From the NCBI RefSeq assembly GCF_000315625.1, contig NW_005434538.1:14166-78165 (forward strand): a stretch of 64,000 bases of DNA. Direction: 5' to 3'. The first letter of the stretch is position 1. Each line of letters starts with the position of its first letter. Below the pieces are notes generated by a model. It had not been told where the DNA came from and did no database searches. It was given only the letters and a program-made list of their open reading frames with translations. Origin of the DNA: Guillardia theta CCMP2712. Taxonomy: Eukaryota; Protista; Cryptophyta. A program made the position numbers and the translations under genes. Below are positions 1 to 45,298 of the stretch, in pieces.

Positions 1-504
1 ATCTTCCTGGTTTCTTCTGCTCACTATCTCCTCTTGACAGATCTTGATTTTCCATTTGTTTTCTAGTTGTGCCTTGGCTCTTTCCTCCAGCCTGTTCTCC
101 TGCTGCCGATTCTTCTTCGTATGTCCTGACCGATTCCCCTACTAAATCCCTTTCAATTCGCTTTCAGACATCCGATAAAGGCTCTGTTTGAGAATGATAT
201 ATCAATGATACATCTCTTACAAGTGCTTAACAAACCAAGTGTTGTCCGAGAGATGCCTAGCAAAGAATTAGACAGGAAAATCACTGAGAACGTTCTATGC
301 ACAGTGTTATTGTTCCTCAATTCCCTTTATTGACTAAGTCTTTGTCAGTCCAAAATGATAAGACGATACTATCTCCAGGTACACACGTCTGGATACTGAT
401 ATGTTTTGCTGCATGCTATGCATGATTTTCTTTCAACCCCTGTTCACATTGTTTATTGGTAATATCGGCAGGCTGTATAGCCATTCCAAACTGGTCACAG
501 CAAG

Positions 505-2259
505 ATGGGAGAGAATGCATGCCGGATTAAAACGCTCTGCATTGGTATTGATGCCTACAAGCATATTCCCACCTTGGACAACGCCATCCGTGACGCTACT
601 GACGTTCACAATCAGCTGGAAAGCAGCCCCGGATGCCAGGCAAATCTTCTGGTCAACCCTTCAACGAGGACGGCGATCACAAGTCAGATTTCTTCCCTCG
701 TAAGGGATCGCAAGACGAGGGGCCTGGAGCTGATATTGGTGTTCTTTGCTGGGCATGGGATGCAGCTAAGTAAAGGAGATATAGCATTGCTAACAAGTGA
801 CATCGTCCGGGCCGAGGAATCTCGAGAGACTAAGCAGAGCATGATAACAGTAGCGGATATGTTGGAGGCCCTTAGAGATGGAGCTGCTCAGAATTCAGAC
901 AGGATTCCTCCTTTGCTGGTTATCATCGATGCCTGTCGAGACTCCAAGAGAAGCGCGTGGATGGGGATGGAGAGGTTGGAGCATGAAGGATCCAACTTGA
1001 CCCAAAGAATGCGAGTGTCGCTGTGCCTATCGTGCAGCAGAGGTCAACAAGCATCGGACGAATCAGCATTCCTCAAAGATCTTCTTGACAGCGAGCTAGG
1101 AATGTTTGCTCAGAATCGAAGACTCAAACTCGCCATAGAATACGCGGTGCGGATGAGCTACGACAGAGAACAAGGAAAGTATGGTCAGTATGCAAGGACA
1201 TTATGTACGGAACTCATTCCAGACAAGCTCTGTATCAGAAATGATAAGACGGTAGCAGCAGACCTGCAACAGATAACGATGGGAGTGGAAAGCTTGATTC
1301 AAAGCGAGGGGATGCAGCCAGACAGTACAGACTCGGGGGTGCAGGTTGTAGCAGCGTACAGTCCTGCAGCAACACGAACAGGAGCAGATGTTTTCCGAGA
1401 AAGTCTCCTCCAGCTCGTAAGAAAAAGCCTTTTTAGCTTGCAAGATAAGGGTCCACGATGGAAAATATGCTCGATGTTCCTTTTGGTGTTCCTGAGCAAC
1501 AAGGGCACGACGTACAAAAAACAAGGTGACCGAGGATTCTTTCATGCCTTTGCAAAGAAGAAGCTTGGGCCTGAGCTGATCAAAAAAGTTGAGAAGGCCA
1601 TGGTTGCCGATGAGATCTGGTCAGAGAAACTGGAGCGATGGATACGAGAGGAGTACGGGGAGATTGACAGGAAGAAGATGGTGACAGCAGCTATTGATTT
1701 CACAGTGCGCGAGGAGATTAGAAGCTCATTGGGACATATGGAAGAGGAGGCGGATACAGAAATTAGCTGGTGGGAGGGGGAGGTCTGCCTTGCAGATCAC
1801 TACAGTAAGGGGGAAAAAGAACAAGAGGAGGCACTAGACCTTGCGGAAGAATATCTCAAAGACAAGATAACCGCTGACCAAGAAGGGGGCCTAAGCCCTC
1901 TGCTTGCTGTTCACGTTCTGACTCGAGTCGTCGAGACCGGCAGCTGCGTTGCGTTCTTGAAGATGACAAGATTGAGCAGCGCTTGTATGTCAGTGATGCT
2001 TGCGAAGAGCGTCCGAGAGGTTCTAGGCGGGAATGGAAAAGAGGGCTTGTTTCGAACATGGATCAGCAGCAGCGGTTGGCTGAGCGGACCTCGTGAGTAC
2101 GGGGAGATGGAGGAGAGGATGGAAGCGAAGGAGGTAGAGATGCTTCGGACCCTGCTGCTCACCGTCGGGGGAGGTGTGTCGAAATTCATTGATTGGAAGA
2201 AATTGGAGCAACCAGGTACTAAACAACCTCTTCGTTGCCCATCTCAATCAACATACTGA
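505..2259 (+). CDS. Caspase-like (peptidase C14, metacaspase/orthocaspase-type) domain protein, copy 1; probably the first large exon of a longer gene
   Basis: N-terminal TLCIGIDAY...LDNAIRDA, catalytic His motif VFFAGHG (His codon 754-756), catalytic Cys motif IIDACR (Cys codon 934-936), then SCSRGQQASD. A likely donor at 2216 (CAG|GTACT) lies before the ORF stop. Confidence 0.88.
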   Translation: MGENACRIKTLCIGIDAYKHIPTLDNAIRDATDVHNQLESSPGCQANLLVNPSTRTAITSQISSLVRDRKTRGLELILVFFAGHGMQLSKGDIALLTSDIVRAEESRETKQSMITVADMLEALRDGAAQNSDRIPPLLVIIDACRDSKRSAWMGMERLEHEGSNLTQRMRVSLCLSCSRGQQASDESAFLKDLLDSELGMFAQNRRLKLAIEYAVRMSYDREQGKYGQYARTLCTELIPDKLCIRNDKTVAADLQQITMGVESLIQSEGMQPDSTDSGVQVVAAYSPAATRTGADVFRESLLQLVRKSLFSLQDKGPRWKICSMFLLVFLSNKGTTYKKQGDRGFFHAFAKKKLGPELIKKVEKAMVADEIWSEKLERWIREEYGEIDRKKMVTAAIDFTVREEIRSSLGHMEEEADTEISWWEGEVCLADHYSKGEKEQEEALDLAEEYLKDKITADQEGGLSPLLAVHVLTRVVETGSCVAFLKMTRLSSACMSVMLAKSVREVLGGNGKEGLFRTWISSSGWLSGPREYGEMEERMEAKEVEMLRTLLLTVGGGVSKFIDWKKLEQPGTKQPLRCPSQSTY

Positions 2260-2848
2260 AATCATGTGGGGCAGGATCGATAACAATCTTGCCTCAAAGA
2301 AAAGGTCAAGCGTTTGATGGACTTGAACGAGAGGAGTATGACCTGAACTTCTAGATCGAAAATCTCTTGAAGATTCGAAACCAAACATCACAATGGAAAA
2401 AGTGCGTAAAGATTTGCCGTTTCATTTTGTTGTCTAGATAACTTTCTTTCTTATTTGTGGTTTCAACAGGTCGACCCTGTGAAGAAAGTGACATATCGAG
2501 AAGAGAAAGTTCCTGCCAAGACTAGCAAGAAATTGAGTGCTGACTCTGCTGGGGTCCAAGAAACCCAACTTGCAGGGTAAGCGAACTGTAGAACTACCAT
2601 TTTTTCATGCCTTCTAGCATTTTGTTTTGTTCACAATGTGGAAGAGGCCGATTACCTGAGGAACTGGAGAGAATTCTCACGCGAAGAAAGCACAAGAGAA
2701 GGGTCCAGTGTAGTGAGAAAACAAGATGGCTTGTTTTTTGAAATTTTCTTAGATTTGATCATCATAATCTCTTAGATATTTTCAAAGTCTACCAGCAGAT
2801 TTAGCAACGGGTAGATTAGAGAGAAACCTTGATTCTTCAAGAGAAGCT

Positions 2849-5695
2849 TTGTTTGCGAACATCCATTTTGACACTTTTGTTTACTTGGCCAGGTCAATGC
2901 TTTCAGTGAAAATGGAAATCGAAGAAAGCTTCGATGGGGCAGGTATCGGAATTTCCGTTGGCGTCGACGGAGAAACCAGCATATGGATGGAGAAGATTTG
3001 TCAAGATTTGAAGGTTGACTTGAAGAGGCTTGAAGCTCACGAATGTGCTTTTTACTCAGACCAGTCTCTCGAACATCAGAGCATGATGACAGACATTTGG
3101 TTTTTTCCCCAGCTGGTGACTGCCTTGCAAAAACGCCTGACCGAAAAAGAAATCGATGTCCTCGACTGTCTTGACGAAGCCAAAGAATCCGAGAATAAAG
3201 CTCTGCGAAAGCGCGAGTTGTTGGAAGGCGCAGCCATCATGGCGCACGCACTCGGTATGAATCAGAAAGAAAAGAATGATCTGATAGGTCTAGCTCTGCG
3301 TATGCGAGGGAAAGAACAAGTCTACAGATGTATGACAAAGTCGACTCAACAACGGACAGAAAGATGGACTTGGCAGAGTTTGAACGCTGATGGCAGTTTC
3401 AGGTTCGTCGAAGTATTTGTGGGAAGTGAAGGCGAAGGTCCTTCCGTTCCTGCAGATAGTAAATCCAGCAGAATACAGATGATTCGCATCAATGAAGGAC
3501 AAGAGCTGGAAGATCGCACCATTGGCTTTCTTATCATCATGCGTCAAACAGCAGACATTGAGTTGTTGGGTAAAGAGCTCAACCTGCTCAGCGAAGCTGA
3601 GCAGAGGCAGGAGGTCTCAGACCGACCATGCAGGATTGAGCTTCAAGGTGCAGGAGACTGTAAGGGACATAAATCAAAGATCGAGATTATCCAGCAGGAT
3701 CTTGAGCAACTCACTCCAGCAGAGTTTGAGAAGCGTGTGAAGGAAGCCTTCGAGTCTGAGGAGTTCACCAAGCCATGTCGAGTGAGAGGAATCGAGAGGA
3801 TCGTCAAGATCGAGATACTCGATGATGGGTTTGGGGGCAAAAAGACGTTTGATCGTCAAGACACGGGTTACTTTCAAGCCATATCGGAGCGATACAACAA
3901 GCAGAGGTCAAACCAAGACCCTGAGCTCGGGCTTCAGCTGGTGATCAAGATGAGGGTCGAGGCGTCGGTGCTTCCGTCATCTGAAGATATTCTAGAGACG
4001 CTTCGACCGCTCGACGCCTCAGAGATCGAGACGGATGCTCGTGCGTTAGGGAGAGTGTTTCCGGAGCAGAAGGCGGTAGCCGGCCGGATCTTGAACCGAC
4101 TCAAGTTTGTGTTGCAGGAGGAGAAGATGAGCCTGAGAGACTTTGAGAAGCTTGACTTTGCGATTCTTGTTCCGAACTTCTTGACCCTCAAGCAGCAGAC
4201 CGAAGCACGCATGCTCGAGACCTTGTTCTCCGATATGACCTCAGACAGAGAGTGTAACAAGGTCGTTGCTCATCAAGCACCTGCGGCGGAGCAGCTGAGA
4301 AAGAAGATTCTGAGCATATCAGACAAGACGCTGTTTGTGCTGATCTCCGATGAGTCGCATTGGGCGTTGAACAAAGGCAGCCCTCAAGACCTGATTATCA
4401 ATGATCCAAACCTGGTGAAGAAGAAGAACTTCATAGTGTTGCAAGTCAGCGCTACACCGTACCCAAACCTCACCCTCCACAGTAGGATACCCGAGAAGTA
4501 CGTGAAGTTCGAGGAGGATGATCCTTACAAGCCGGTGCAAGAAGCGAAGGAGCGAAGGGTTGGCAAGTTTGATGAGGAGCTGCACGTGATCAAGTGGAAG
4601 TTGAGATCGCGGAGATACCGGACGATATACTTTCGGTTTGAAGACTTCCTGCGAACTTTGCCGTCTTATGTCTTAGATGAGTGTATCCTACCCGGTGAAG
4701 AGGCTTCTGCAGACGATCAAGCTCGAGAGGACGTGCGGAATCAACTCATCCGTCGAGAAAACAACCTGATCAGCACGCTGATGGAGTCCGTCAAAGTTTC
4801 GAGGAAGAAGAAGGAAGAAGAAGAAGCCGTCAGGGAGCATGTCTGGCTCGCAGACTTTATCCTTTCGATGCTCTACTTTCACAAAGTCCGTTGGGACCGA
4901 AGCACTGGCAGGCTGAAGAGTGTTGCTGACGACTTGCACAACATCACTCTGAAAGATCTGGAGAAGTTGAAGCTCGAGGAAGAATACATGACAATAGCAA
5001 ACCAGTGTAAGTCAAGTGGAGCTAGACAAGCTTGTGCGAAGCTGCGGGAGCGAGTCAAGGAGACCCTGAAGGAGGAGAGAAGTGGGAGTGCGGCTCGGGA
5101 TTGTATCGCCGAGGTGTTCTACATCAAACTGAAGTCAGAGGCCAAGGAAGAAAGTGTTGAAGTGAATGATGACGACTCGTTCATGGAGGCAGACGACTAC
5201 TTCCAATTCAATGAGACAGATAGAATAGTCAAGGATCTTCTAAGCAATCGCACGCATAACGGAGGTCTTTACGGACATATGAAAGTAGTCCGCATGTTTA
5301 GCATCAAGCTGGCCGATCAGGTTTGTGAGGAGCTGAAGCGAATACGCAAATCCTTGTTTGGAGATTCGGTATTCGCGGTCATCGAAGACTACGGAGGGTC
5401 TGAGCTGTACGACTGCATTGAAACTCAGTTTCGAGATCAGCCGCTGACCTACGACAAGGACAAAGCACCTCGCTCTATCAACTCGCTCATTCAAGGCAGA
5501 GCGCGTGGAAAGAAGTTGACGAGCCTGAACTACAAGGACCTTGAGGGACTCCCGTGTATCTTGTTCCTGATCGAGAAGGGCCGCATGGGCGACACGTTCC
5601 CGCACTCCTTCGATTGTCTTGACTTGCGCGTGCGCTCGTCTGACAACACGACGACGCTGATCCAGGTGCGACCTCTTGTCGCCTCGTGTACTTGA
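2849..5695 (+). CDS. GREB1-like protein copy 1, exon carrying SF2 helicase motifs II-V
   Basis: FAILVP (motif Ia-like), LISDESH (DExH, 4349-4360), QVSATP (motif III, ~4448), EKGRMGDTFP (motif V, ~5573). Intron 5666-5740 (GTGCG...CTGAC...TGCAG) joins in frame to give LIQ|EMGRLCR (motif VI). Confidence 0.85.
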   Translation: MFANIHFDTFVYLARSMLSVKMEIEESFDGAGIGISVGVDGETSIWMEKICQDLKVDLKRLEAHECAFYSDQSLEHQSMMTDIWFFPQLVTALQKRLTEKEIDVLDCLDEAKESENKALRKRELLEGAAIMAHALGMNQKEKNDLIGLALRMRGKEQVYRCMTKSTQQRTERWTWQSLNADGSFRFVEVFVGSEGEGPSVPADSKSSRIQMIRINEGQELEDRTIGFLIIMRQTADIELLGKELNLLSEAEQRQEVSDRPCRIELQGAGDCKGHKSKIEIIQQDLEQLTPAEFEKRVKEAFESEEFTKPCRVRGIERIVKIEILDDGFGGKKTFDRQDTGYFQAISERYNKQRSNQDPELGLQLVIKMRVEASVLPSSEDILETLRPLDASEIETDARALGRVFPEQKAVAGRILNRLKFVLQEEKMSLRDFEKLDFAILVPNFLTLKQQTEARMLETLFSDMTSDRECNKVVAHQAPAAEQLRKKILSISDKTLFVLISDESHWALNKGSPQDLIINDPNLVKKKNFIVLQVSATPYPNLTLHSRIPEKYVKFEEDDPYKPVQEAKERRVGKFDEELHVIKWKLRSRRYRTIYFRFEDFLRTLPSYVLDECILPGEEASADDQAREDVRNQLIRRENNLISTLMESVKVSRKKKEEEEAVREHVWLADFILSMLYFHKVRWDRSTGRLKSVADDLHNITLKDLEKLKLEEEYMTIANQCKSSGARQACAKLRERVKETLKEERSGSAARDCIAEVFYIKLKSEAKEESVEVNDDDSFMEADDYFQFNETDRIVKDLLSNRTHNGGLYGHMKVVRMFSIKLADQVCEELKRIRKSLFGDSVFAVIEDYGGSELYDCIETQFRDQPLTYDKDKAPRSINSLIQGRARGKKLTSLNYKDLEGLPCILFLIEKGRMGDTFPHSFDCLDLRVRSSDNTTTLIQVRPLVASCT

Positions 5696-5725
5696 CCGCG
5701 GGGTCCTCAACCTCCTCCTACTGAC

Positions 5726-8700
5726 TTGAACGTGCTGCAGGAGATGGGCAGACTCTGTCGCTACCCGACTTTGCGTGAGGAGCACCGCTTCGAGACATCG
5801 GAGGAGGCGGTGCAGGTAGCAAAGGAGAAGAGATGGTTCGAAGGGAAGGGACGGCCGATCGTTGTGTATGCGAATGCTGCAGACGATGAAGTGGATCTTT
5901 CACAAGGTCTCGATGGGAAGCGACTCATTGGGATAGCGTGGAGCTTGTCCAGCTGGACTCAGAAAAGTATTCTGCAGGTCGTGGAACGTGGCAAGACCTT
6001 GTCGCCTGGAAGGAGAGGTGAAGAAGATTGGTACACGCTGGATCGGAATGTTGACAGAAGCGCCCAAGCATCAATGGCTGAGGATCTGAAAGGCTGTATG
6101 CTCATTCGCTTCCCCGCAAGTACCATGAACAGACGAGCAGTACCATGGGGAGACGTTCAGTGTCTCAAGATAACAGAGTCTCGAAGAAAGGACGATGAGA
6201 CGAAGATCAGAGTCCAGGACATTTCTCAAGTTAAGAAATACAATAACTTTGGTCCAGATAGCACGTACATAATCGTGCGGGACAGCGCAAGCTTGGCTTG
6301 GCTAGCTAGCAGGCACAGCTGCCCTCACGGAGGAGTGCTGAAGGAGCTGGAGCATGACCTCCCGTCTGCCCTCGTGAGCTCCTCCTTGTACGACACGCTC
6401 ATGAAAGCAGTGGAGACAGCTGAATACTGCAGCAAAGAGATCTGGGAATGCATCCGACTCAGCCCACAACTTCACACGCACATGAAGCGAAAAGACGACA
6501 GGGGTCAGCTGGTCATCAGCTACCAGAAGAACGATCTGCATGACTACAGGAATCGACACGTGGCCGTGACGCGAGCAAAGGCTGAGGGAGAAGGCTCCAA
6601 GAGAGTCAAAGTCAATCATTGCGACTGGTGTCAAGACCACACGAAAAGAAGACAGCATCAGCTTCGCTTTCTTTTACATGCAGAGTGTCAGATCGGCAAG
6701 ACAGGAGCGTATCTGCACCTTCTCAACCTTCTCAGGAGAGAAGTTGGTCTGAGAGCTGACAGTGAGTATGCCTGCATACCTCAAATACGACCAGAGGATT
6801 ACCCGATAAAGGTTGAGTTCCAAACTCGCCTTGCCTGGGAGATGCCGTTCTGGCGGGATCTAGCTGGGCAGAAGCTTGGTCTTTTCAAGATGAAGGAGGG
6901 GAAATATCACAAGATGGTGATCTTTCAGCGCCTGAGGCTTCTGGCCAAGTGTCTGCGAGACAGTCGTGGCCGGTCGTCATGGCAGCAGCTGTACTGTAAT
7001 GGACTGCTGGCTCCAGCGTCAAGCCAGAACGCTGAAGGCGAGTGCATACAAGTGAAGGAGAAAGTCATTCGTCTCCTAAAGAAAGTGTCGAAGAGTAACA
7101 GCAGTCCGATCGAGATCATCTCAGAAGGAGCTGAAGTCAAGCTGAAGATCTTAGACTTTGAGAGGCTGAGAGACATCGTCGAGTGGGACAGGGAAGACAG
7201 CATGCCTTCTATCGTTGCAGACATGAGGAAAACAGGATTGAAAACTCGATCTGGTGAAACTCTGCTCCAATCAAACCAGGACAAGAGCGAGCTCAGTCTC
7301 TCTGCCTTGGGTTCGAAAACAGACCTACAGAACATTGCATGGGAGGGCAGGGAAACGACGGCTGGGACCTCCTCAGGACTCGCGACAGGGCAAGTGAAGA
7401 ATGATTTCCCTGCGCGATGCCTCTGCCTCCACACGCTCCCAGAGAAGACCAAGGTGAAGCTGCTGCGACTGTCGCCGATCATGAGAGGCGTGAGGATAGC
7501 TCGCTTGTTTGGAGACGACGAGCGTCGATGGCCGAGGATTTCCTTTCCTTTTGGAGAAGAACAAGTGTCACGGTATTTCTCGCTCAGGGACGGGAGAGTG
7601 AATGGCGCTTTTGAGCTTCAAGGGGAGAAAGCTATCCGCAACTGGGTGATGACTGCTTCTTACAAGCGAGACGCTGCCGGCAGCATCCAGACAGGGCGAG
7701 CTGCATTTCTTGATCGATCGAGCGCCTTCAAAGAGGGAGACCGCGACGTACCTGTACGGCAGATGTTGCTTGTACGACCGGATGACGGCGAGGGAGACGG
7801 GCAGTTCTCGAGCTACGTCAGCGAGGTAGGAAGCGAGTACATCGTGGTCGCTCTGTCGCACGAGATGATTCTGAGCGAGGCTGTAAGCGAGCTGGGCTTT
7901 CGCTCTGAGCAGTTTGAGCACCAGATGCCCGATGACGGAAAGCTTCGCCTGACCCCTCAGGACGGAGGGATAGGATACGCGAGGCTGTTCGCCCAGCTGT
8001 TCGCGCATCTGCTGGGCCTGGAGAGAGTCTGGATGATCGACGACAACGTTCTCGATTGCTACCAGCTGGACCTGAGCAAGATGTTTGCAAGCGACCCGCC
8101 GCTACTTCACCCGCCTATTGCTTGCTCGTTTGCGACGATAATGCTGCAGATGCAGGATATGATCAGTGATGCACCCAAGTCATCTGAAGAGATATGCCGC
8201 CATCACCGCAAGCAAGGGAAGGGACAAGCGTGTCCGAAGACAGAAGGCTTCTTCGATCATGAGTCGAGCATGACAACCAAGAGCTGTCAGGCTGTGCGAG
8301 GAGCTGCGGCTAAAGCTGCTGCCATGGAGCGAGGAGTCAAGAGCACGCCTGATATCTCTACAATACAGGATGTCCGCGGGAACACGGACGGCTATGCAGT
8401 GATCGGGATGCGACGAGATGTGAACGTGTTCATGAAAAGCAGTGTTCCCTTCAAGATAACTCACAGCGTCTACTCGTTCTTCTTGCTGAATGTCAAGTCG
8501 ACGATTGGCAAGGGAGTTTTGTTTCCACCCAAGAAGGTGTGGGAGGACGTGGATTTCAACAACCTGTGCGAGGAGGCGGGTCTGGCAGTGCTGAAGGTGA
8601 ACCGCTTCTTTCATCACAAGCAGCACCGCAGCCTTCATGACAGGCTGGAGGTTGACGGTCAGCCTGAGGCCTGCGAGGTTGTTTGTCGGGTGCATGTGAA

Positions 8701-9643
8701 TGGTCGACAGATCTTCAACGTTGCATGTGGTAGCGAGATGTCAACTCTGAGTGATGTGTACGAGACTATCGTCAAGAGGCTGAAAAGGTTGTATCCGCAG
8801 TCAGACATCAAGAAGGTCACTTGCAGGATACAAGGCGGAGACATCAGCTTTGCCTACAAGGAGAGTTACAGGGACATCAAGGAGCTGGAAGGTCAAGAAA
8901 TGTGCGAGGCAGTGTACTTGGATGTATTGTTTCCATATGAGGCCCGTGAAAGAATGCAAGTCGATGAAGCTATCGTGACGACAAGTACTTCCAAGGCCTC
9001 GATACCCTTCCTTGTGAGCCTGGTAGAGAGTCAAAGGAATATTTTCTACTATCCTCCAAGATATGAAATGGACGAGTCTGAAGGTGACCAGCCTTTCTTT
9101 GCAGAGGTCCCTGCAGGCAGAAAGTGGAACGAGTTTTCAGATACCAATCTCCGGAATGTCAAACTCAAGGAGATAAATGTCATGTGGGACGACGTCGAAG
9201 AGTACAAACGGTTCTTCAACATCGTTCGGAACCTGCTGCGAGATAAGGAATGTATCAGAAAGATCAACTTGATCCTCCCCGCCAAGGCGTATGAAACCAT
9301 GAAGGAGAAGATAGACGACAAGATCAAAAACCTTCGCATCGGAAAGATGACCAAGACTTGGACCACTGTGTTGCCTTGCAAGGAGGACGCGAGTCAAGAG
9401 GACGATGTTGACATGATAGAGGCATCACAATCAGACAATGCCGAGAGTACGATGGACTTTGTCGTCATCTGCTGCAGTAGCGAGGAGGAGAAGAAGGTCT
9501 GTCTAGCAGCTCCATCTTGTCTTACCAGCGTCGATCCTAATCAGAATGTGTCAGGCTGCTCAAGACAAGGGGGAGGGGCAACGAGCCGTAAGCCTGCATC
9601 TCGCTTGTGTCGCTCGCTGACGAGAGTAGCAGGAGGCAGATGA
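5726..9643 (+). CDS. GREB1-like protein copy 1, exon carrying helicase motif VI, the permuted Walker A and a TAGT-type glycosyltransferase
   Basis: QEMGRLCR; LLHAECQIGKTGAYLHLL (~6670-6725), matching the GREB1 QIGKTGAYL signature as recalled. GT-A motifs GGIGYAR, WMIDDN, VYSFFLLN and WEDVDFNNLCEEAGLAVLKVNRFFHHK. The true exon is likely 5741-9496. Confidence 0.85.
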   Translation: MNVLQEMGRLCRYPTLREEHRFETSEEAVQVAKEKRWFEGKGRPIVVYANAADDEVDLSQGLDGKRLIGIAWSLSSWTQKSILQVVERGKTLSPGRRGEEDWYTLDRNVDRSAQASMAEDLKGCMLIRFPASTMNRRAVPWGDVQCLKITESRRKDDETKIRVQDISQVKKYNNFGPDSTYIIVRDSASLAWLASRHSCPHGGVLKELEHDLPSALVSSSLYDTLMKAVETAEYCSKEIWECIRLSPQLHTHMKRKDDRGQLVISYQKNDLHDYRNRHVAVTRAKAEGEGSKRVKVNHCDWCQDHTKRRQHQLRFLLHAECQIGKTGAYLHLLNLLRREVGLRADSEYACIPQIRPEDYPIKVEFQTRLAWEMPFWRDLAGQKLGLFKMKEGKYHKMVIFQRLRLLAKCLRDSRGRSSWQQLYCNGLLAPASSQNAEGECIQVKEKVIRLLKKVSKSNSSPIEIISEGAEVKLKILDFERLRDIVEWDREDSMPSIVADMRKTGLKTRSGETLLQSNQDKSELSLSALGSKTDLQNIAWEGRETTAGTSSGLATGQVKNDFPARCLCLHTLPEKTKVKLLRLSPIMRGVRIARLFGDDERRWPRISFPFGEEQVSRYFSLRDGRVNGAFELQGEKAIRNWVMTASYKRDAAGSIQTGRAAFLDRSSAFKEGDRDVPVRQMLLVRPDDGEGDGQFSSYVSEVGSEYIVVALSHEMILSEAVSELGFRSEQFEHQMPDDGKLRLTPQDGGIGYARLFAQLFAHLLGLERVWMIDDNVLDCYQLDLSKMFASDPPLLHPPIACSFATIMLQMQDMISDAPKSSEEICRHHRKQGKGQACPKTEGFFDHESSMTTKSCQAVRGAAAKAAAMERGVKSTPDISTIQDVRGNTDGYAVIGMRRDVNVFMKSSVPFKITHSVYSFFLLNVKSTIGKGVLFPPKKVWEDVDFNNLCEEAGLAVLKVNRFFHHKQHRSLHDRLEVDGQPEACEVVCRVHVNGRQIFNVACGSEMSTLSDVYETIVKRLKRLYPQSDIKKVTCRIQGGDISFAYKESYRDIKELEGQEMCEAVYLDVLFPYEARERMQVDEAIVTTSTSKASIPFLVSLVESQRNIFYYPPRYEMDESEGDQPFFAEVPAGRKWNEFSDTNLRNVKLKEINVMWDDVEEYKRFFNIVRNLLRDKECIRKINLILPAKAYETMKEKIDDKIKNLRIGKMTKTWTTVLPCKEDASQEDDVDMIEASQSDNAESTMDFVVICCSSEEEKKVCLAAPSCLTSVDPNQNVSGCSRQGGGATSRKPASRLCRSLTRVAGGR

Positions 9644-9854
9644 AGCGAAGCAGCAGGAGGCGAAGCAGCAGGAGGCAAAGCGACAGGAGGCGAAGCAGCA
9701 GGAGGCGAAGCGACAGGCTGAGGAGGAGAGCAGCGACTCATCCAAGAAGCCCAAGACTGAGGAGCCGGAGAAGAGGAAGAGCTCTGAACCTCCAGTAGGG
9801 GAGAGTCCTGCGAAGAAGGTGAGAGCGAGGCTGTCAGTCAGTCGCTGCTGACGT

Positions 9855-10226
9855 TTGTTGCAGGGTAAAGCTGCCGAGAAGCAGGGAGACTTGTGGAGGA
9901 CAGAAAAGTGGAAGAGGAAGTTCCAAGAAGGAACAGTGCGGGTGGGCGACAACATATCATACCGTCCGGCGAAGCAAGAGGCGGTGAGCTTTGAACATGG
10001 AGAGGAAGGTGTGTGGAGACTTCAAGTGACATCTGAGCAGAGGGAAGGCAAAGTGATTGAAGGGGGGAAAATAGAAGAGAAAGGCAGAACATTCGCAGAT
10101 GTGTTGGAATTCTTCCGATCCGGAGGTGATGAAGCGCCTGTGGCGAAACTGCGAAGTGTGTATATCAACAGAGATGGGAAGAACATTATTTCAGTTCACG
10201 ATCTCTTGAAGCAAGAAAAGGATTAA
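9855..10226 (+). CDS. Terminal exon of GREB1-like protein copy 1, probable RAMA-like domain
   Basis: Linked in frame by introns 9497-9554, 9588-9629 and 9819-9863. The sequence EGTVRVGD...GKVIEGGKIEEKGRTFADVLEF...SVYINRDG..SVHDLL fits the RAMA pattern by eye. Confidence 0.6.
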   Translation: MLQGKAAEKQGDLWRTEKWKRKFQEGTVRVGDNISYRPAKQEAVSFEHGEEGVWRLQVTSEQREGKVIEGGKIEEKGRTFADVLEFFRSGGDEAPVAKLRSVYINRDGKNIISVHDLLKQEKD

Positions 10227-16850: not shown

Positions 16851-17552
16851 TTCATGATTGTCGTTACCGTTACTGAGACTGAGGGCCCGCGGCCGCAGTT
16901 TTTTGAAAGTTTTGCGGGACTTTATTAACCGCTTTTCAGCACTGCACGGTCACTATCCGATCACCGTCCGCCGATCACCGTGGCACCGTCCGACGCAGTT
17001 GGGCCCGGGCCGGTCAAGCCTCGCCGAACTCGGAAGGGGATGTGGGATTAATATTCTGATTTTAACTTAATATTCTTCACCCCCATTTGCTAGCCGTTTT
17101 TCACCCACTCCTAATGATGGGTGACCCTTTGTTGATTGTGAAACGGAACGGTTGGTTCAGCACGGGTAGTATTATGTCGAATATGACCGGTTGTTCTGGG
17201 CCTCGTTTTAATATATGTCCTACAAACGTGTAGGTTTAAAAATCACCCTCACGTCCCCCCTCTACTCCTCTCACGTCCCCCTGAAGAATCTTTCTCCCGT
17301 CCGAAATCACATCTCTTGGTACATTTCTCTCTAAGAGATGCGATATGGATGTCAGCTACACGGTTGGATTGCCTCCCTGGTCATAGAGGGTTCGCTGACA
17401 AGTCATGTTGTAAAGTGGGTCGTGTACATCCCACGTCCCCCACAACGTCCCCTTGAGGCCTGGTCATACGGAAATGTTCCGCCCCTCCCTGCCGTTTTTC
17501 AAGGAATCTTCACTTTTTGCCTGGCCATCTCAAGCAACAGCGGGAAGATACC

Positions 17553-37346: not shown

Positions 37347-37736
37347 TCAATCCTTTTCTTGCTTCAAGAGATCGTGAACTGAAATAAAGTTCTTCCCATC
37401 TCTGTTGATATACACACTTCGCAGTTTCTGTCCTGGCGCTGACCCTGAGGCATCTCCATCATCGACTCCGGATCGGAAGAATTCCAACACATCTGCGAAT
37501 GTTTTGCCTTTCTCTTCTATTTTCCCCCCTTCAATCACTTTGCCTTCCCTCTGCTCAGATGTCACTTGAAGTTTCCACACACCTTCCTCTCCATGTTCAA
37601 AGCTCACCGCCTCTTGCTTCGCCGGACGGTATGATATGTTGTCACCCACCCGCACTGCTCCTTCTTGGAACTTCCTCTTCCACTTTTCTATCCTCCACAA
37701 GTCTCCCTGCTTCTCGGCAGCTTTACCCTGCAACAA
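37347..37736 (-). CDS. Terminal exon of GREB1-like protein copy 2, probable RAMA-like domain
   Basis: Paralogous to 9855-10226, with a 6-aa longer loop. Confidence 0.6.
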   Translation of the reverse strand: MLQGKAAEKQGDLWRIEKWKRKFQEGAVRVGDNISYRPAKQEAVSFEHGEEGVWKLQVTSEQREGKVIEGGKIEEKGKTFADVLEFFRSGVDDGDASGSAPGQKLRSVYINRDGKNFISVHDLLKQEKD

Positions 37737-37941
37737 ACGTCAGCAGCGACTGACTGACAGCCTCGCTCTCACCTTCTTCGCAGGACTCTCCCCTACCGGA
37801 GGTTCAGAGCTCTTCCTCTTCTCCGGCTCCTCAGTCTTGGGCTTCTTGGATGAGTCGCTGCTCTCCTCCTCAGCCTGTGGCTTCGCCTCCTGCTGCTTCG
37901 CCTCCTGCTGCTTCGCTTCATCTGCCTCCTGCTGCTTCGCT

Positions 37942-40900
37942 TCATCCGCCTCCTGCTACTCTCGTCAGCGAGCGACACAAGCGAGATGCAGGCTTACGGC
38001 TCGTAGCCCCTCCCCCTTGTCTTGAGCAGCCTGACACATTCTGATTAGGATCGACGCTTGTGAGACAAGATGGAGCTGCTAGACAGACCTTCTTCTCCTC
38101 CTCGCTACTGCAGCAGATGACGACAAAGTCCATCGTACTCTCGGCATTGTCTGATTGTGATGCCTCTATCATGTCAACATCGTCCTCTTGACTCGCGTCC
38201 TCCTTGCAAGGCAACACAGTGGTCCAAGTCTTGGTCATGTTTCCGATGCGAAGGTTTTTGATCTTGTCGTCTATCTTCTCCTTCATGGATTCATACGCCT
38301 TGGCGGGGAGGATCAAGTTGATCTTTCTGATACATTCCTTATCTCGCAGCAGGTTCCGAACGATGTTAAAGAACGGTTTAAACGCTTCGACGTCGTCCCA
38401 CATGATATTTAACTCCTCGAGTTTGACTCTGTCGAGACTTTTATCTGAAAGCTCGTTCCACTTTCTGCCTGCAGGGACCTCTGCAAAGAAAGGCTGGTCA
38501 CCTTCAGACTCGTCCAATGCACGCCTAGACGGAAAGTAGAAAATATTCCTTTGGCTCTCTACCAGGCTCACAAGGAAGGGTATCGAGGCCTTGGAAGTAC
38601 TTGTCGTCACGATAGCTTCATCGACTTGCATTCTTTCACGGGCCTCATATGGAAACAATACATCCAAGTACACTGCCTCGCACATTTCTTGACCTTCCAG
38701 CTCTTTGATGTCCCTGTAACTCTCCTTGTAGGCAAAGCTGATGTCTCCGCCTTGTATCCTGCAAGTGACCTTCTTGATGTCTGACTGCGGATACAACCTT
38801 TTCAGCCTCTTGACGATAGTCTCGTACACATCACTCAGAGTTGACATGTCGCTACCACATGCAACGTTGAAGATCTGTCGACCATTCACATGCACCCGAC
38901 AGACTACCTCGCAGGCCTCAGGCTGATCGTCAACCTCCAGCCTGTCATGAAGGCTGCGGTGCTGCTTGTGATGAAAGAAGCGGTTCACCTTCAGCACTGC
39001 CAGACCCGCCTCCTCGCACAGGTTGTTGAAATCCACGTCCTCCCACACCTTCTTGGGTGGAAACAAAACTCCCTTGCCAATCGTCGACTTGACATTCAGC
39101 AAGAAGAACGAGTAGACGCTGTGAGTTATCTTGAAGGGAACACTGCTGTTCATGAACACGTTCACATCTCGTCGCATCCCGATCACTGCATAGCCGTCCG
39201 TGTTCCCGCGAACGTCCTGTATTGTAGAGATATCAGACGTGCTCTTGACTCCTCGCTCCATGGCAGCAGCTTTAGCCGCAGCTCCTCGCACAGCCTGACA
39301 GCTCTTGGGTATCATGCTCGACTCATGATCGAAGAAGCCGTCTGTCTTCGGACACGCTTGTCCCTTCCCTTGCTTGTGGTGTTGGCGGCATATCTCTTCA
39401 GATGACTTGGGTGCATCACTGATCATATCCTGCATCTGCAGCATTATCGTCGCAAACGAGCAAGCAACAGGCGGGTGAAGTAGCGGCGGGTCGCTTGCAA
39501 ACATCTTGCTCAGGTCCAGCTGGTAGCAATCGAGAACGTTGTCGTCGATCATCCAGACTCTCTCCAGGCCCAGCAGGTGCGCGAACAGCTGGGCGAACAG
39601 CCTCGCGTATCCTATCCCTCCGTCCTGCGGGGTCAGGCGAAGCTTTCCGTCATCGGGCATCTGGCGCTCAAACTGCTCAAAGCGAAAGCCCAGCTCGCTT
39701 ACAGCCTCGCTCAGAATCATCTCGTGCGACAGAGCGACCACGATGTACTCGCTTCCTACCTCGCTGACGTAGCTCGAGAACTGCCCGTCTCCCTCGCTGT
39801 CATCCGGTCGTACAAGCAACATCTGCCGTACAGGTACGTCGCGGTCTCCCTCTTTGAAGGCGCTCGATCGATCAAGAAATGCAGCTCGCCCTGTCTGGAT
39901 GCTGCCGGCAGCGTCTCGCTTGTAAGAAGCAGTCATCACCCAGTTGCGGATAGCTTTCTCCCCTTGAAGCTCAACAGCGCCATTCACTCTCCCGTCCTTG
40001 AGCGAGAAATACCGTGACACTTGTTCTTCTCCGAAAGGAAAGGAAATCCTCGGCCATCGACGCTCGTCGTCTCCAAACAAGCGAGCTATCCTCACGCCTC
40101 TCATCATCGGCGACAGTCGCAGCAGCTTCACCTTGGTCTTCTCTGGGAGCGTGTGGAGGCAGAGGCATCGCGCAGGGAAATCATTCTTCACTTGCCCTGT
40201 CGCGAGTCCTTGAGAGGTCCCAGCCGTCGTTTCCCTGCCCTCCCATGCAATGTTCTGAAGGTCTGTTTTCGAACCCAAGGCAGAGAGACTGAGCTCGCTC
40301 TTGTCCTGGTTTGATTGGAGCAGAGTTTCACCAGATCGAGTTTTCAATCCTGCTTTCATCATGTCTGCAACGATAGAAGGCATGCTGTCTTCCCTGTCCC
40401 ACTCGACGATGTCTCTCAGTCTCTCAACGTCTAAGATCCTCAGCTTGACTTCAGCTCCTTCTGAGATGATCTCGATCGGACTGCTGTCACTCTTCCACAC
40501 TTTCTTTAGGAGACGAATGACTTTCTCCTTCACTTGTATGCACTCGCCCTCAGCGTTCTGGCTTGACGCTGGAGCCAGCAGCGCTTTACAGTACAGCTGC
40601 TGCCATGACGACCGGCCACGACTGTCCCGCAGACACTTGGCCAGAAGCCTCAGGCGCTGAAAGATCACCATCTTGTGATATTTCCCCTCCTTCATCTTGA
40701 AAAGACCAAGCTTCTGCCCAGCTAGATCCCGCCAGAACGGCATCTCCCAGGCAAGGCGGGTTTGGAACTCAACCTTTATCGGGTAATCCTCTGGTCGTAT
40801 TTGAGGTATGCAGGCATACTCACTGTCAGCTCTCAGACCAACTTCTCTCCTGAGAAAGTTGAGAAGGTGCAGATACGCTCCTGTCTTGCCGATCTGACAC

Positions 40901-41850
40901 TCTGCATGTAAAAGAAAGCGAAGCTGATGCTGTCTTCTTTTCGTGTGGTCTTGACACCAGTCGCAATGATTGACTCTGACTCTCTTGGAGCCTTCTCCCT
41001 CAGCCTTTGCTCGCGTCACGGCCACGTGTTGGTTCCTGTAGTCATGCAGCTCGTTCTTCTGGTAGCTGATGACCAGCTGACCCCTGTCGTCTCTTCGCTT
41101 CATGTGCGTGTGAAGTTGTGGGCTGAGTCGGATGCATTCCCAGATCTCTTTGCTGCAGTATTCAGCTGTCTCCACTGCTTTCATGAGCGTGTCGTACAAG
41201 GAGGAGCTCACGAGGGCAGACGGGAGGTCATGCTCCAGCTCCTTCAGCACTCCTCCGTGAGGGCAGTTGTGCCTGCTAGCTAGCCAAGCCAAGCTTGCGC
41301 TGTCCCGCACGATTATGTACGTGCTATCTGGACATTTCTTGACTTGTGAACTGTCCTGGACTCTGATCTTCGTCTCATCGTCCTGTCTTCGAGACTCTGT
41401 TATCTTGAGACACTGAACGTCTCCCCATGATGGTGATCCTCCTATCTTAAACGTACTCGTGGGGAAGCGAATGAGCATACAGCCTTTCAGATCCTCAGCC
41501 ATTGATGCTTGGGCGCTTCTGTCAACATTCCGATCCAGCGTGTACCAATCTTCTTCACCTCTCCTTCCAGGCGACAAGGTCTTGCCACGTTCCACGACCT
41601 GCAGAATACTTTTCTGAGTCCAGCTGGACAAGCTCCACGCTATCCCAATGAGTCGCTTCCCATCGAGACCTTGTGACAGATCCACTTCATCGTCTGCAGC
41701 ATTCGCATACACAACGATCGGCCGTCCCTTCCCTTCGAACCATCTCTTCTCCTTTGCTACCTGCACCGCCTCCTCCGATGTCTCGAAGCAGTGCTCCTCA
41801 CGCAAAGTCGGGTAGCGACAGAGTCTGCCCATCTCCTGCGGCACGTTCAA
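37942..41850 (-). CDS. GREB1-like protein copy 2, exon with motif VI, permuted Walker A and TAGT glycosyltransferase
   Basis: QEMGRLCR, CQIGKTGAYL, GGIGYAR, WMIDDN and WEDVDFN are all intact. Intron 41836-41910 is conserved. Confidence 0.85.
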   Translation of the reverse strand: MNVPQEMGRLCRYPTLREEHCFETSEEAVQVAKEKRWFEGKGRPIVVYANAADDEVDLSQGLDGKRLIGIAWSLSSWTQKSILQVVERGKTLSPGRRGEEDWYTLDRNVDRSAQASMAEDLKGCMLIRFPTSTFKIGGSPSWGDVQCLKITESRRQDDETKIRVQDSSQVKKCPDSTYIIVRDSASLAWLASRHNCPHGGVLKELEHDLPSALVSSSLYDTLMKAVETAEYCSKEIWECIRLSPQLHTHMKRRDDRGQLVISYQKNELHDYRNQHVAVTRAKAEGEGSKRVRVNHCDWCQDHTKRRQHQLRFLLHAECQIGKTGAYLHLLNFLRREVGLRADSEYACIPQIRPEDYPIKVEFQTRLAWEMPFWRDLAGQKLGLFKMKEGKYHKMVIFQRLRLLAKCLRDSRGRSSWQQLYCKALLAPASSQNAEGECIQVKEKVIRLLKKVWKSDSSPIEIISEGAEVKLRILDVERLRDIVEWDREDSMPSIVADMMKAGLKTRSGETLLQSNQDKSELSLSALGSKTDLQNIAWEGRETTAGTSQGLATGQVKNDFPARCLCLHTLPEKTKVKLLRLSPMMRGVRIARLFGDDERRWPRISFPFGEEQVSRYFSLKDGRVNGAVELQGEKAIRNWVMTASYKRDAAGSIQTGRAAFLDRSSAFKEGDRDVPVRQMLLVRPDDSEGDGQFSSYVSEVGSEYIVVALSHEMILSEAVSELGFRFEQFERQMPDDGKLRLTPQDGGIGYARLFAQLFAHLLGLERVWMIDDNVLDCYQLDLSKMFASDPPLLHPPVACSFATIMLQMQDMISDAPKSSEEICRQHHKQGKGQACPKTDGFFDHESSMIPKSCQAVRGAAAKAAAMERGVKSTSDISTIQDVRGNTDGYAVIGMRRDVNVFMNSSVPFKITHSVYSFFLLNVKSTIGKGVLFPPKKVWEDVDFNNLCEEAGLAVLKVNRFFHHKQHRSLHDRLEVDDQPEACEVVCRVHVNGRQIFNVACGSDMSTLSDVYETIVKRLKRLYPQSDIKKVTCRIQGGDISFAYKESYRDIKELEGQEMCEAVYLDVLFPYEARERMQVDEAIVTTSTSKASIPFLVSLVESQRNIFYFPSRRALDESEGDQPFFAEVPAGRKWNELSDKSLDRVKLEELNIMWDDVEAFKPFFNIVRNLLRDKECIRKINLILPAKAYESMKEKIDDKIKNLRIGNMTKTWTTVLPCKEDASQEDDVDMIEASQSDNAESTMDFVVICCSSEEEKKVCLAAPSCLTSVDPNQNVSGCSRQGGGATSRKPASRLCRSLTRVAGGG

Positions 41851-41880
41851 GTCAGTAGGAGGAGGTTGAGGACCCCGCGG

Positions 41881-44730: not shown

Positions 44731-45298
44731 AGCTTCTCCTGAAGAATCCGTTGCTAAATCTGCTGGTAGACTTTGAAAATATCTAAGAGATTATGATGAT
44801 CAAATCTAAGAAAATTTCAAAAAACAAGCCATCTTGTTTTCTCACTACACTGGACCCATCTCTTGTGCTGTCCTCGCGTGAGATTTCTCGCCAGTTCCTC
44901 AGGTCATCGGCCTCTTCCACATTGCAAACAAAACAAAATGCTAGAAGGCATGAAAAAATGGTAGTTCTACAGTTCGCTTACCCTGCAAGCGGGGTTTCTT
45001 GGACCCCAGCAGAGTCAGCACTCAATTTCTTGCTAGTCTTGGCAGGAACTTTCTCTTCTCGATATGTCACTTTCTTCACAGGGTCGACCTGTTGAAACCA
45101 AAAATAAGAAAGAAAGTTATCCAGACAACAAAATGAAACGGCAAATCTTTACGCACCTTTTCCATTTTGATGTTTGGTTTCGAATCTTCAAGAGATTTTC
45201 GATCTGGAAGTTCAAGTCATACTCCTCTCGTTCAAGTCAATCAAACGCTTGACCTTTTCTTTGAGGCAAGATTGTTATCGATCCTGCCCCACATGATT

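What the first reader, a model, noticed from the sequence alone, without database searches (positions are those of the whole stretch)
505..10226. Candidate new system: caspase-like protease + circularly permuted SF2 helicase + GREB1/TAGT glycosyltransferase + RAMA-like domain in one algal locus
Seen: an intact C14 His/Cys dyad, a complete but permuted set of SF2 motifs, GT-A motifs and a small terminal domain. All are co-oriented, and from 2849 onward they are joined in frame by canonical introns. Established: a permuted SF2 helicase plus a TET-associated glycosyltransferase (TAGT) is the architecture of animal GREB1. TAGTs are related to the kinetoplastid base-J glucosyltransferase and to phage DNA-hypermodifying enzymes. 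Caspase-like proteases are typical death or immunity effectors. Inference: a roughly 3,000-aa sensor-effector that reads or glycosylates nucleic acid, possibly viral, and couples this to proteolysis. I do not know of this four-part combination in an alga.
Basis: partly seen in the sequence, partly recalled or inferred. Interest (0 to 1): 0.92.

Follow-up and report, generated by a model that had tools for sequence, protein, structure and literature searches.

The report
Caspase fused to GREB1-like helicase-glycosyltransferase
In the alga Guillardia theta, one transcribed gene of about 3,000 codons joins a bacterial-type caspase-like protease to a GREB1-like helicase-glycosyltransferase; the same protease module also heads NLR-like immune-type proteins in this genome, which hints at a defence or cell-death role that has not been tested.

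Summary
The window is Guillardia theta CCMP2712. Window 505-10226 is one gene, already in GenBank as the hypothetical protein GUITHDRAFT_146838 (3,011 aa).

- **Fusion:** spliced RNA contigs from two studies join the caspase ORF in frame to the helicase ORF through three micro-exons.
- **Domains:** Pfam confirms Peptidase_C14 (His84/Cys144 intact), a full cpSF2-GREB1 helicase (motif order II-III-VI-Walker A, all intact) and a marginal but real TAGT glycosyltransferase.
- **RAMA:** the "RAMA-like" label for the last 120 aa is not supported.
- **Copies:** an inverted copy that is 96.6% identical lies at 37349-47627. Two more GREB1-like paralogues elsewhere lack both the caspase and the tail.
- **Origin of the protease module:** it is a stand-alone family of about 30 copies. 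Its 300-aa middle domain also occurs in front of NACHT-WD40 and of Ank bodies.
- **Uniqueness:** no other long protein found in the searched databases combines this caspase module with cpSF2.

This is therefore a lineage-specific fusion. It is one of several N-terminal additions seen in the widespread GREB1-like family. A sensor-effector role is plausible but only inferred. No TET/JBP gene and no viral relatives were found. The scan's own other notes cover only this same stretch.

The parts
505..2215 (+). Exon 1. It encodes the caspase-like protease fold (aa 1-250, window 505-1254; His84 in 748-759, Cys144 in 928-939) and a roughly 300-aa middle domain with no family match (aa 246-548, window 1240-2148).
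   Evidence: Pfam Peptidase_C14, 7e-16. AlphaFold model with pTM 0.75, and Foldseek match to MALT1 and caspases at 4e-7. The donor at 2216 is used in the RNA contigs. The middle domain is shared with NACHT-WD40 and CHAT-Ank open frames.
2275..2304 (+). Micro-exon 2 (30 nt). It is absent from the public gene model.
   Evidence: RNA contigs X1 and X2 show GT..AG joints at 2216-2274 and 2305-2354. The frame stays open.
2355..2401 (+). Micro-exon 3 (47 nt).
   Evidence: Joints in RNA contigs X1 and X2.
2470..2576 (+). Exon 4 (107 nt), a lysine-rich linker.
   Evidence: Joints at 2402-2469 and 2577-2892 in X1 and X2.
2893..5665 (+). Exon 5. It holds the pre-helicase region and the first part of the cpSF2 helicase (Pfam match from 4052; motif II DESH at 4349-4360; motif III SAT within 4445-4459). 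The GREB1-like core shared with the paralogues begins near 2939.
   Evidence: Pfam cpSF2-GREB1, 2.8e-130. The acceptor at 2893 comes from RNA. The core limits come from tblastn against the C229 and C280 paralogues.
5666..5740 (+). 75-nt intron inside helicase motif VI (Q|EMGRLCR).
   Evidence: Joint in RNA contig X1; contig X2 breaks at the same two places. GT..AG in both gene copies.
5741..9496 (+). Exon 6. It holds the rest of cpSF2 up to 6745 (Walker A AECQIGKT at 6680-6703), an inter-domain region, the TAGT GT-A domain at about 7739-8620 (MIDDN at 8033-8047, EDVDFN at 8543-8560) and a post-GT region. The shared core ends near 9376.
   Evidence: Pfam cpSF2-GREB1 at 7e-62 and TAGT. BLASTP 2e-22 to the Planoprotostelium TAGT region. 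Motif conservation across the family.
9555..9587 (+). Exon 7 (33 nt). It is supported by the public gene model only.
   Evidence: Mapping of P0151 onto the window. GT..AG in both copies. Not seen in reads.
9633..9818 (+). Exon 8. It encodes an (EAKQQ)n charged repeat and a basic KKPK...KRK stretch (9744-9779) that looks like a nuclear localisation signal.
   Evidence: Public gene model. The tail has dN/dS 0.25 between the two copies. The localisation-signal reading is inference from the sequence.
9864..10226 (+). Exon 9. It encodes a terminal 120-aa domain of unknown fold and the stop codon. The public model also removes 9981-10037 (57 nt, GT..AG, in frame), which is unverified.
   Evidence: The ORF is present. 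It is 93% identical in copy B and is found nowhere else in the genome. No Pfam or RAMA match. AlphaFold pLDDT 47.
37349..47627 (-). Inverted duplicate of the whole gene (GUITHDRAFT_146844, 2,974 aa). The two copies face each other 3' end to 3' end. Identity is 96.6% over 10 kb, and similarity ends at the stop codon.
   Evidence: blastn. ORFs at 45299-47053, 41881-44730 and 37942-41850. Names. All splice sites are intact.
379..471 (+). Optional 93-nt intron in the 5' untranslated region.
   Evidence: A low-depth joint in X2, while the X1 contig retains it. Sequence read.

Best explanation
SHOWN. Window 505-10226 is one transcribed nuclear gene of Guillardia theta. It has nine coding exons and encodes about 3,001 aa. 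It arose by a lineage-specific fusion of three pieces:
- An N-terminal bacterial-type caspase-like protease with a roughly 300-aa middle domain. This module also exists as a stand-alone family of about 30 genomic copies. Its middle domain also sits in front of NACHT-WD40 and of Ank bodies in the same genome.
- A GREB1-like core, made of a circularly permuted SF2 ATPase with all NTPase motifs intact and a TAGT-type GT-A glycosyltransferase with its DDN and ED.xFN motifs.
- A charged tail, possibly carrying a nuclear localisation signal, that ends in a small domain of unknown fold.
The gene was recently duplicated in inverted orientation, and both copies are intact.

INFERRED. The protein works like a helicase-based counterpart of an NLR. 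The permuted SF2 ATPase engages a nucleic acid or other polymer and acts as an NTP-driven switch. The TAGT domain transfers a sugar to the bound target, either a protein (as reported for mammalian GREB1) or a nucleic acid. The caspase-like module is the output, cleaving itself or other proteins on activation. This would place the gene in the alga's conflict or cell-death repertoire.
For: - **Single spliced mRNA.** RNA contigs from two studies (9,162 nt and 4,712 nt) remove introns 2216-2274, 2305-2354, 2402-2469, 2577-2892 and (X1) 5666-5740, all GT..AG. DNA-like contigs from another run keep them.
- **Source of the RNA.** Apart from 11 letters in 1177-1618, the RNA matches copy A at all of the 219 sites where A and B differ over the laid stretch.
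- **Open frame.** The frame is open across all junctions.
- **Domains and motifs.**
- **Both copies maintained.** Neither has a stop codon, exon indels are all multiples of 3, and dN/dS is 0.54 overall and 0.25 in the tail.
- **Fusion is lineage-specific.** The paralogues on C229 and C280 share only aa 648-2768.
- **Stand-alone protease family.** The caspase module occurs alone in G. theta and in Hanusia phi transcripts, at 574-870 aa.
- **Middle domain elsewhere.** It recurs in a 1,695-aa NACHT-pentapeptide-WD40 open frame (2e-30) and a 1,428-aa CHAT-Ank open frame (6e-21).
- **Nearest caspase relatives.** These are the bacterial 'caspase, EACC1-associated type' and the PADLOC caspase model.
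- **Other N-terminal additions in the family.** Kinase, WD40 and ankyrin.
Against: - Function is not tested at all.
- dN/dS of 0.54 and patchy divergence (variance/mean 4.7) fit relaxed constraint or gene-conversion mosaics as well as diversifying selection.
- No viral or prokaryotic relatives of the helicase were found.
- There was no PADLOC hit for the helicase or the GT.
- The neighbouring genes are ordinary, an ABCG transporter and a kinesin.
- Raw-read coverage in one RNA run was low: 7 reads in about 6% of the run.
- The three 3' junctions, and the 57-nt intron inside the last exon, rest on the public gene model alone.
- The ATPase is an SF2 helicase, not a STAND NTPase, so the NLR comparison is an analogy only.
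Confidence: 0.45

Rival explanations
1. It is a housekeeping or regulatory protein glycosyltransferase, as reported for mammalian GREB1. The helicase part serves as a scaffold or targeting module. The caspase-like domain only processes the polyprotein or trims substrates, with no immune or death role.
For: - Mammalian GREB1 is reported to O-GlcNAcylate ER-alpha in the cytoplasm (PMC7968844).
- The core family is widespread in eukaryotes and carries varied N-terminal additions: kinase, WD40 and ankyrin.
- The genomic neighbourhood is ordinary.
- No TET/JBP gene was found.
Against: - The protease module is shared with NACHT-WD40 and CHAT-Ank architectures and belongs to a family of about 30 copies. 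That pattern is typical of conflict genes rather than housekeeping genes.
- The ATPase motifs are fully intact.
- The gene was recently duplicated and the copies differ in patches.
Confidence: 0.25
2. It is a DNA-base glycosyltransferase machine like the base-J system. The helicase translocates on DNA and the TAGT domain glycosylates hydroxymethylated bases, acting as an epigenetic or anti-viral DNA mark.
For: - TAGT is related to the base-J and phage DNA glycosyltransferases (PMC7968844).
- The TAGT motifs are intact.
- The helicase motifs are intact.
- The tail has a basic stretch that looks like a nuclear localisation signal.
Against: - No Tet_JBP match was found in the 87-Mb genome. That search had no positive control, and introns could hide a gene.
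- No viral relatives were found.
- No glycosylated base is known to me in cryptophytes (own knowledge).
Confidence: 0.12
3. It is a conjoined transcript. Two neighbouring genes, a stand-alone caspase-family gene and a GREB1-like gene, are read through and spliced together, but the working products are separate proteins.
For: - The caspase ORF keeps its own stop codon 14 codons past the splice donor.
- Stand-alone homologues end at the same point.
- The paralogues lack the caspase.
- An ATG lies in micro-exon 3, at 2393.
Against: - Only the spliced, in-frame form was assembled, in two independent RNA data sets.
- Three micro-exons keep 61 codons open.
- All splice sites and frames are preserved in the duplicate.
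- Both public gene models also fuse them.
Confidence: 0.1

Closest known systems
Animal GREB1 / GREB1L (Pfam cpSF2-GREB1 PF20692 plus TAGT PF20691)
   Same: It has the same core: a circularly permuted SF2 helicase followed by a TAGT-type GT-A glycosyltransferase. The cpSF2 profile match runs nearly end to end (positions 2-705 of 716, 675 bits on copy B).
   Different: - It carries an N-terminal caspase-like module and a C-terminal tail that animal GREB1 lacks.
- No CxxC-type Zn-binding N-terminus is evident.
- The ATPase motifs are intact here, whereas the human helicase domain is described as catalytically inactive (PMC7968844).
- It is about 1,000 aa longer.
Protist and coral GREB1-like proteins: Hondaea fermentalgiana GBG30820.1, Planoprotostelium PRP75493.1, Cyanophora, Mallomonas, Porites and Montipora
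   Same: They share the cpSF2 plus TAGT core and the same conserved motifs: DE[CAS]H, SAT, QExGRxCR, AExQIGKT, DDN and ED.xFN.
   Different: Their N-terminal additions are different: a protein kinase, WD40, ankyrin, or a tandem second core. None of those checked has a caspase.
Bacterial-type metacaspase-like proteases / orthocaspases (NCBIfam 'caspase, EACC1-associated type'; the metacaspase-like class of Choi & Berges 2013, PMC3734836)
   Same: It has the p20-type His/Cys dyad and the caspase fold. By sequence and by structure these are the nearest relatives of the N-terminal domain.
   Different: - The NCBIfam score of 42 bits is far below the cut-off of 140, so it is not a member of that subfamily.
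- It is followed by a middle domain specific to cryptophytes.
- Here it is fused to a helicase-glycosyltransferase.
NLR-like proteins with an N-terminal effector, and RIG-I-like receptors (the comparison is from my own knowledge)
   Same: It has the same logic of an N-terminal effector or adaptor, a central NTPase and C-terminal recognition parts. The same protease-associated middle domain precedes a NACHT-WD40 body in G. theta.
   Different: The NTPase is a permuted SF2 helicase rather than a STAND NTPase. It has an added glycosyltransferase. No repeat-type sensor domain is present.
Base-J glucosyltransferase (JGT) and phage TET/JBP-associated glycosyltransferases
   Same: The GT-A domain is homologous (TAGT family).
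   Different: No TET/JBP partner was detected in the genome. The domain is embedded in a giant multidomain protein. Its substrate is unknown.

Membership tests
Peptidase C14 (caspase / metacaspase superfamily) | Profile match above the curated cut-off | tested here: met
   PF00656 scores 59 bits against a cut-off of 21.4, over aa 11-195.
Peptidase C14 (caspase / metacaspase superfamily) | Catalytic His/Cys dyad | tested here: met
   His84 lies in AGHG and Cys144 in DACR. Both columns are nearly invariant across 10 homologues.
Peptidase C14 (caspase / metacaspase superfamily) | Caspase-haemoglobinase fold | tested here: met
   AlphaFold model with pTM 0.75. Foldseek matches MALT1 and caspases at E 4e-7, probability 1.0, over about 250 aligned columns.
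Peptidase C14 (caspase / metacaspase superfamily) | Proteolytic activity | not testable with these tools
   This needs an enzyme assay.
GREB1-like (cpSF2 + TAGT) | cpSF2-GREB1 helicase domain | tested here: met
   PF20692 scores 436.6 plus 210.5 bits on the two window ORFs, and 674.9 bits over profile positions 2-705 of 716 on copy B.
GREB1-like (cpSF2 + TAGT) | Permuted motif order, with Walker A after motif VI | tested here: met
   DESH is at aa 1118, SAT at 1151, QEMGRLCR at 1556 and AECQIGKT at 1870.
GREB1-like (cpSF2 + TAGT) | C-terminal TAGT GT-A domain | tested here: met
   PF20691 scores 29.3 bits against 27.5 on the domain region. It scores 26.4 bits on the whole ORF, below the cut-off. 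BLASTP gives 2e-22 to the Planoprotostelium region, which itself scores 44.8 bits. The DDN and ED.xFN motifs are conserved.
GREB1-like (cpSF2 + TAGT) | N-terminal Zn-binding domain of animal GREB1 | tested here: inconclusive
   There is no Pfam hit and there are no CxxC pairs in aa 571-1045. I could not confirm that a profile for that domain was in the library.
TET/JBP-TAGT DNA-base modification systems | A TET/JBP dioxygenase partner in the same genome | tested here: inconclusive
   PF12851 found nothing in the 87-Mb genome. The search had no positive control, and exon-by-exon matching may miss a gene.
RAMA domain (PF18755) | Profile match of the terminal 120 aa | tested here: not met
   hmmscan at E up to 10 gives only RH3_dom (0.14) and DUF3145 (0.078), with no RAMA. 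There was no hit in NCBIfam or PADLOC.
RAMA domain (PF18755) | Fold | tested here: inconclusive
   The AlphaFold model from two sequences has pLDDT 47, too poor to compare. The ESM Atlas search by sequence features gave only a weak best hit of 0.82, and the next hits were SLBB-domain clusters.
NLR-like / STAND sensor-effector proteins | STAND NTPase (NACHT or NB-ARC) core | tested here: not met
   No STAND domain is present. The NTPase is an SF2 helicase.
NLR-like / STAND sensor-effector proteins | N-terminal module shared with true NLR-like proteins | tested here: met
   The middle domain (aa 246-548) matches aa 268-570 of a NACHT-pentapeptide-WD40 open frame at 2e-30, and a CHAT-Ank open frame at 6e-21.

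The most novel reading that the evidence does not exclude
GREB1-like proteins are, at root, NTP-driven sensors of foreign or aberrant nucleic acid. In Guillardia, one lineage has captured the protease module used by the alga's NLR-like proteins. That would create a helicase-based death or immunity switch that both glycosylates its target and fires a caspase-like protease. If so, it would give animal GREB1 an immune ancestry.
Probability: 0.15. Interest if true: 0.85.

Novelty: new variant of a known kind. Interest (0 to 1): 0.55.

Why it matters
GREB1 is a clinically important but mechanistically obscure animal protein. Its protist relatives have hardly been studied. This gene gives a version with every ATPase and glycosyltransferase motif intact, wired to a protease module that the same genome also places on NACHT-WD40 proteins. 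That makes a concrete and testable suggestion about what the ancestral GREB1-like machine does. It also adds a non-STAND, helicase-based architecture to the list of candidate innate-immunity or cell-death proteins in algae. Separately, it shows that the public gene models for both copies miss a 30-nt micro-exon and use a different acceptor for exon 5.

Tried and rejected
- **RAMA identity of the tail.** Pfam, NCBIfam and PADLOC gave nothing. The AlphaFold model was too poor to search. The ESM Atlas gave only weak hits, topping out at 0.82 and mostly SLBB-like.
- **Viral origin or a mobile-element setting.** The 27 kb between the two copies encodes an ABCG transporter, a kinesin and unnamed ORFs. 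IMG/VR holds no relative of the helicase block.
- **Prokaryotic relatives of the helicase.** None were found with the motif-VI block.
- **Solved structures.** No PDB relative was found by sequence for exon 5 or exon 6.
- **Middle domain.** There was no Pfam hit and no usable ESM Atlas hit.
- **N-termini of the C229 and C280 paralogues.** No domains were found upstream, only a Copia-type retroelement 5 kb from the C280 copy.
- **Hanusia phi fragment P0002.** It is closest to the C280 paralogue (48-49% identity), so it says nothing about how old the fusion is.
- **Iyer et al. 2013 (the paper that defined TAGT and GREB1).** It could not be opened in the paper library, so what I say about it rests on PMC7968844 and my own knowledge.
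- **3' junctions.** The length of contig X1 fits an end either at about 10227 or at about 10284, and so does not settle the 57-nt intron.
Full report
**1. What is there**

Pfam gives:
- Peptidase_C14 for the first ORF (59 bits against a cut-off of 21.4).
- cpSF2-GREB1 for the second and third (436.6 bits on profile positions 2-420, and 210.5 bits on 420-705).
- A short TAGT match in the third, at 26.4 bits, just under the 27.5 cut-off.
- Nothing for the fourth.

Scanned on its own, the TAGT region reaches 29.3 bits. It also aligns at 2e-22 with the TAGT region of a Planoprotostelium protein that scores 44.8 bits.

**2. Organism and public status**

The genome has 87.1 Mb in 669 contigs. The proteins are named in the public collection:
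- This window's gene is GUITHDRAFT_146838 (XP_005821902.1, UniProt L1IFS4, 3,011 aa, 'uncharacterized') of Guillardia theta CCMP2712.
- An inverted copy in the same window is GUITHDRAFT_146844 (L1IF99, 2,974 aa, 'Caspase family p20 domain-containing protein').

The fused model is therefore already in the annotation. My literature searches found no paper that mentions GREB1 together with Guillardia, or together with a caspase fusion.

**3. Transcript evidence**

I laid reads and contigs on window 300-6299.
- Two runs from different studies gave long contigs, 9,162 nt at depth 199 and 4,712 nt. These lack 2216-2274, 2305-2354, 2402-2469 and 2577-2892, each bounded by GT..AG. The longer contig also lacks 5666-5740, and the other run's contigs break at exactly those two places.
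- A third, DNA-like run gave only contigs colinear with the genome. The spliced contigs must therefore derive from RNA.
- Their letters match copy A at every one of the 219 sites where copies A and B differ, except for 11 letters in 1177-1618 that match neither copy.
- Splicing uses a donor 14 codons before the caspase ORF's own stop. It passes through three micro-exons of 30, 47 and 107 nt and enters the helicase ORF at 2893. The frame stays open throughout.

This answers the main open point: the caspase is part of the same polypeptide. The public models differ from the RNA in two places. They skip the 30-nt micro-exon and use an acceptor near 2777.

The three 3' introns (9497-9554, 9588-9632, 9819-9863) and a 57-nt in-frame intron inside the last exon (9981-10037) come from the public models only. 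All have GT..AG in both copies. The tail shows purifying selection, with dN/dS 0.25. With the 57 nt kept, the protein is 3,001 aa.

**4. Domain anatomy, in aa of the RNA-based model**

- **aa 1-250: caspase fold.** His84 lies in AGHG and Cys144 in DACR. The AlphaFold model of the module has pTM 0.75. It matches MALT1 paracaspase and caspases at E 4e-7.
- **aa 246-548: middle domain.** This is an alpha/beta domain with no family match.
- **aa 571-632: linker** encoded by the micro-exons.
- **aa 648-2768: GREB1-like core.**
  - Helicase motif II DESH is at 1118, motif III SAT at 1151, motif VI QEMGRLCR at 1556 (split by the 75-nt intron) and Walker A AECQIGKT at 1870. The permutation is real and the motif set is complete.
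  - The GT-A domain spans about aa 2223-2516, with GYAR...MIDDN (aa 2321-2325) and EDVDFN (aa 2491-2496).
  - The same motifs are the consensus across 80-160 family representatives.
- **Tail.** It has an (EAKQQ)n repeat, a basic KKPK...KRK stretch that looks like a nuclear localisation signal (inference), and a 120-aa terminal domain.
  - That domain has no RAMA or other profile match.
  - Its AlphaFold model is unusable, at pLDDT 47.
  - It is found nowhere else in the genome except copy B.

**5. Evolutionary context**

*The duplicate.* Copy B lies at 37349-47627 on the minus strand and is 96.6% identical over 10 kb. Similarity stops at the stop codon.
- Exon and intron divergence are about equal, near 3%.
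- All exon indels are multiples of three, and both copies are open.
- Overall dN/dS is 0.54 and dS is 0.046.
- Differences are strongly clustered (variance/mean 4.7). The patches lie at aa 351-450, 651-800, 1651-1700 and 2651-2700, where the ratio of nonsynonymous to synonymous changes is near neutral.
- This pattern fits local diversification, relaxed constraint or a gene-conversion mosaic. I cannot tell which.

*The core family in this genome.* Two further GREB1-like genes lie on contigs C229 and C280, at about 40% identity. They share only aa 648-2768 and have no caspase nearby.

*The caspase module.* It is a family of about 30 genomic copies.
- It exists as stand-alone proteins of 574-870 aa in G. 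theta and in Hanusia phi transcripts.
- These end at the point where the fusion's donor lies.
- Its middle domain also recurs in a 1,695-aa open frame with NACHT, pentapeptide and WD40 domains, and in a 1,428-aa open frame with CHAT and ankyrin repeats.

*Beyond Guillardia.*
- No other protein of 1,656-5,269 aa in the 5.8-billion-protein collection matches the caspase module.
- None of the 150 best cpSF2 representatives carries the caspase module, apart from the two G. theta copies.
- Other GREB1-like proteins carry other N-terminal additions: a protein kinase (Cyanophora), WD40 (a metagenomic protein), ankyrin (corals) or a second core in tandem (Hondaea, Planoprotostelium).

**6. Function**

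Nothing here tests function directly.

Points in favour of a conflict or cell-death role:
- The protease module is shared with NLR-like bodies.
- The protease family is large.
- The nearest caspase relatives are bacterial conflict-system types.
- The ATPase is intact.
- The gene was recently duplicated, and the copies differ in patches.

Points against, or neutral:
- The neighbouring genes are ordinary.
- There are no viral or prokaryotic helicase relatives.
- There is no PADLOC hit for the core.
- Mammalian GREB1 is reported to be a protein O-GlcNAc transferase (PMC7968844).
- A role like base J is weakened by the lack of any Tet_JBP match in the genome, although that search had no positive control.

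My estimates:
- About 0.45 for an NTP-switch plus protease-output machine of the conflict or cell-death type.
- 0.25 for a housekeeping protein glycosyltransferase.
- 0.12 for DNA-base glycosylation.
- 0.10 for a conjoined transcript whose products act apart.

**7. Verdict**

The architecture is real and appears unique to Guillardia in the data searched. However, it is a lineage-specific variant of a known and widespread family, not a new system. It is already present, undescribed, in public annotation. The RAMA label fails. Interest is moderate.

Noticed in passing
G000:C118:111532-116616 (-), locus L030:1033-6117: A 1,695-aa open frame reads: N-terminal region with no family match, then the caspase-family middle domain (aa 268-570), then NACHT (aa 910-1029), pentapeptide repeats and WD40. 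This is an NLR-like architecture in a cryptophyte.
   Followed up: partly
G000:C4:309595-313878 (-), locus L031:2096-6379: A 1,428-aa open frame carries a CHAT protease domain, the same middle domain and C-terminal ankyrin repeats.
   Followed up: partly
G000:C97, locus L032:6621-9383 (-): A 921-aa open frame with an ADP-ribosyltransferase (ART) domain and ankyrin repeats sits inside the array of caspase-family genes on contig C97.
   Followed up: no
window 1177-1618: RNA contigs from two studies carry the same 11 substitutions here. They match neither copy A nor copy B. The cause could be a third allele or copy, a strain difference or a reference error. The stretch lies next to one of the patches where A and B diverge.
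   Followed up: partly
window 2275-2304 and 2777-2892: The public gene models for both copies skip a 30-nt micro-exon that the RNA supports. They also extend exon 5 upstream by 39 codons compared with the RNA acceptor at 2893.
   Followed up: yes
window 17517-21940 (+): Two adjoining ORFs encode a full-size ABCG/PDR-type ABC transporter (ABC_tran plus ABC2_membrane, twice). It lies between the two inverted gene copies.
   Followed up: no
window 34871-35908 (-): An exon encoding a kinesin motor domain.
   Followed up: no
window 58736-60709 (+): A 657-aa ORF has a fungal-type Zn(2)-Cys(6) binuclear cluster domain, which is unusual outside fungi.
   Followed up: no
G000:C280:17678-21468, locus L011:22-3812: Copia-type retrotransposon ORFs (integrase fragment and RVT_2) lie about 5 kb upstream of the C280 GREB1-like paralogue.
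   Followed up: no
protein P0152 (ENA, 1,300 aa, on a 6,900-nt contig): An environmental or other-strain sequence is 93% identical to copy A and 91% to copy B over the helicase-TAGT part. It reads through the intron after exon 6, so it is genomic. This suggests a third close variant exists outside the reference strain.
   Followed up: no
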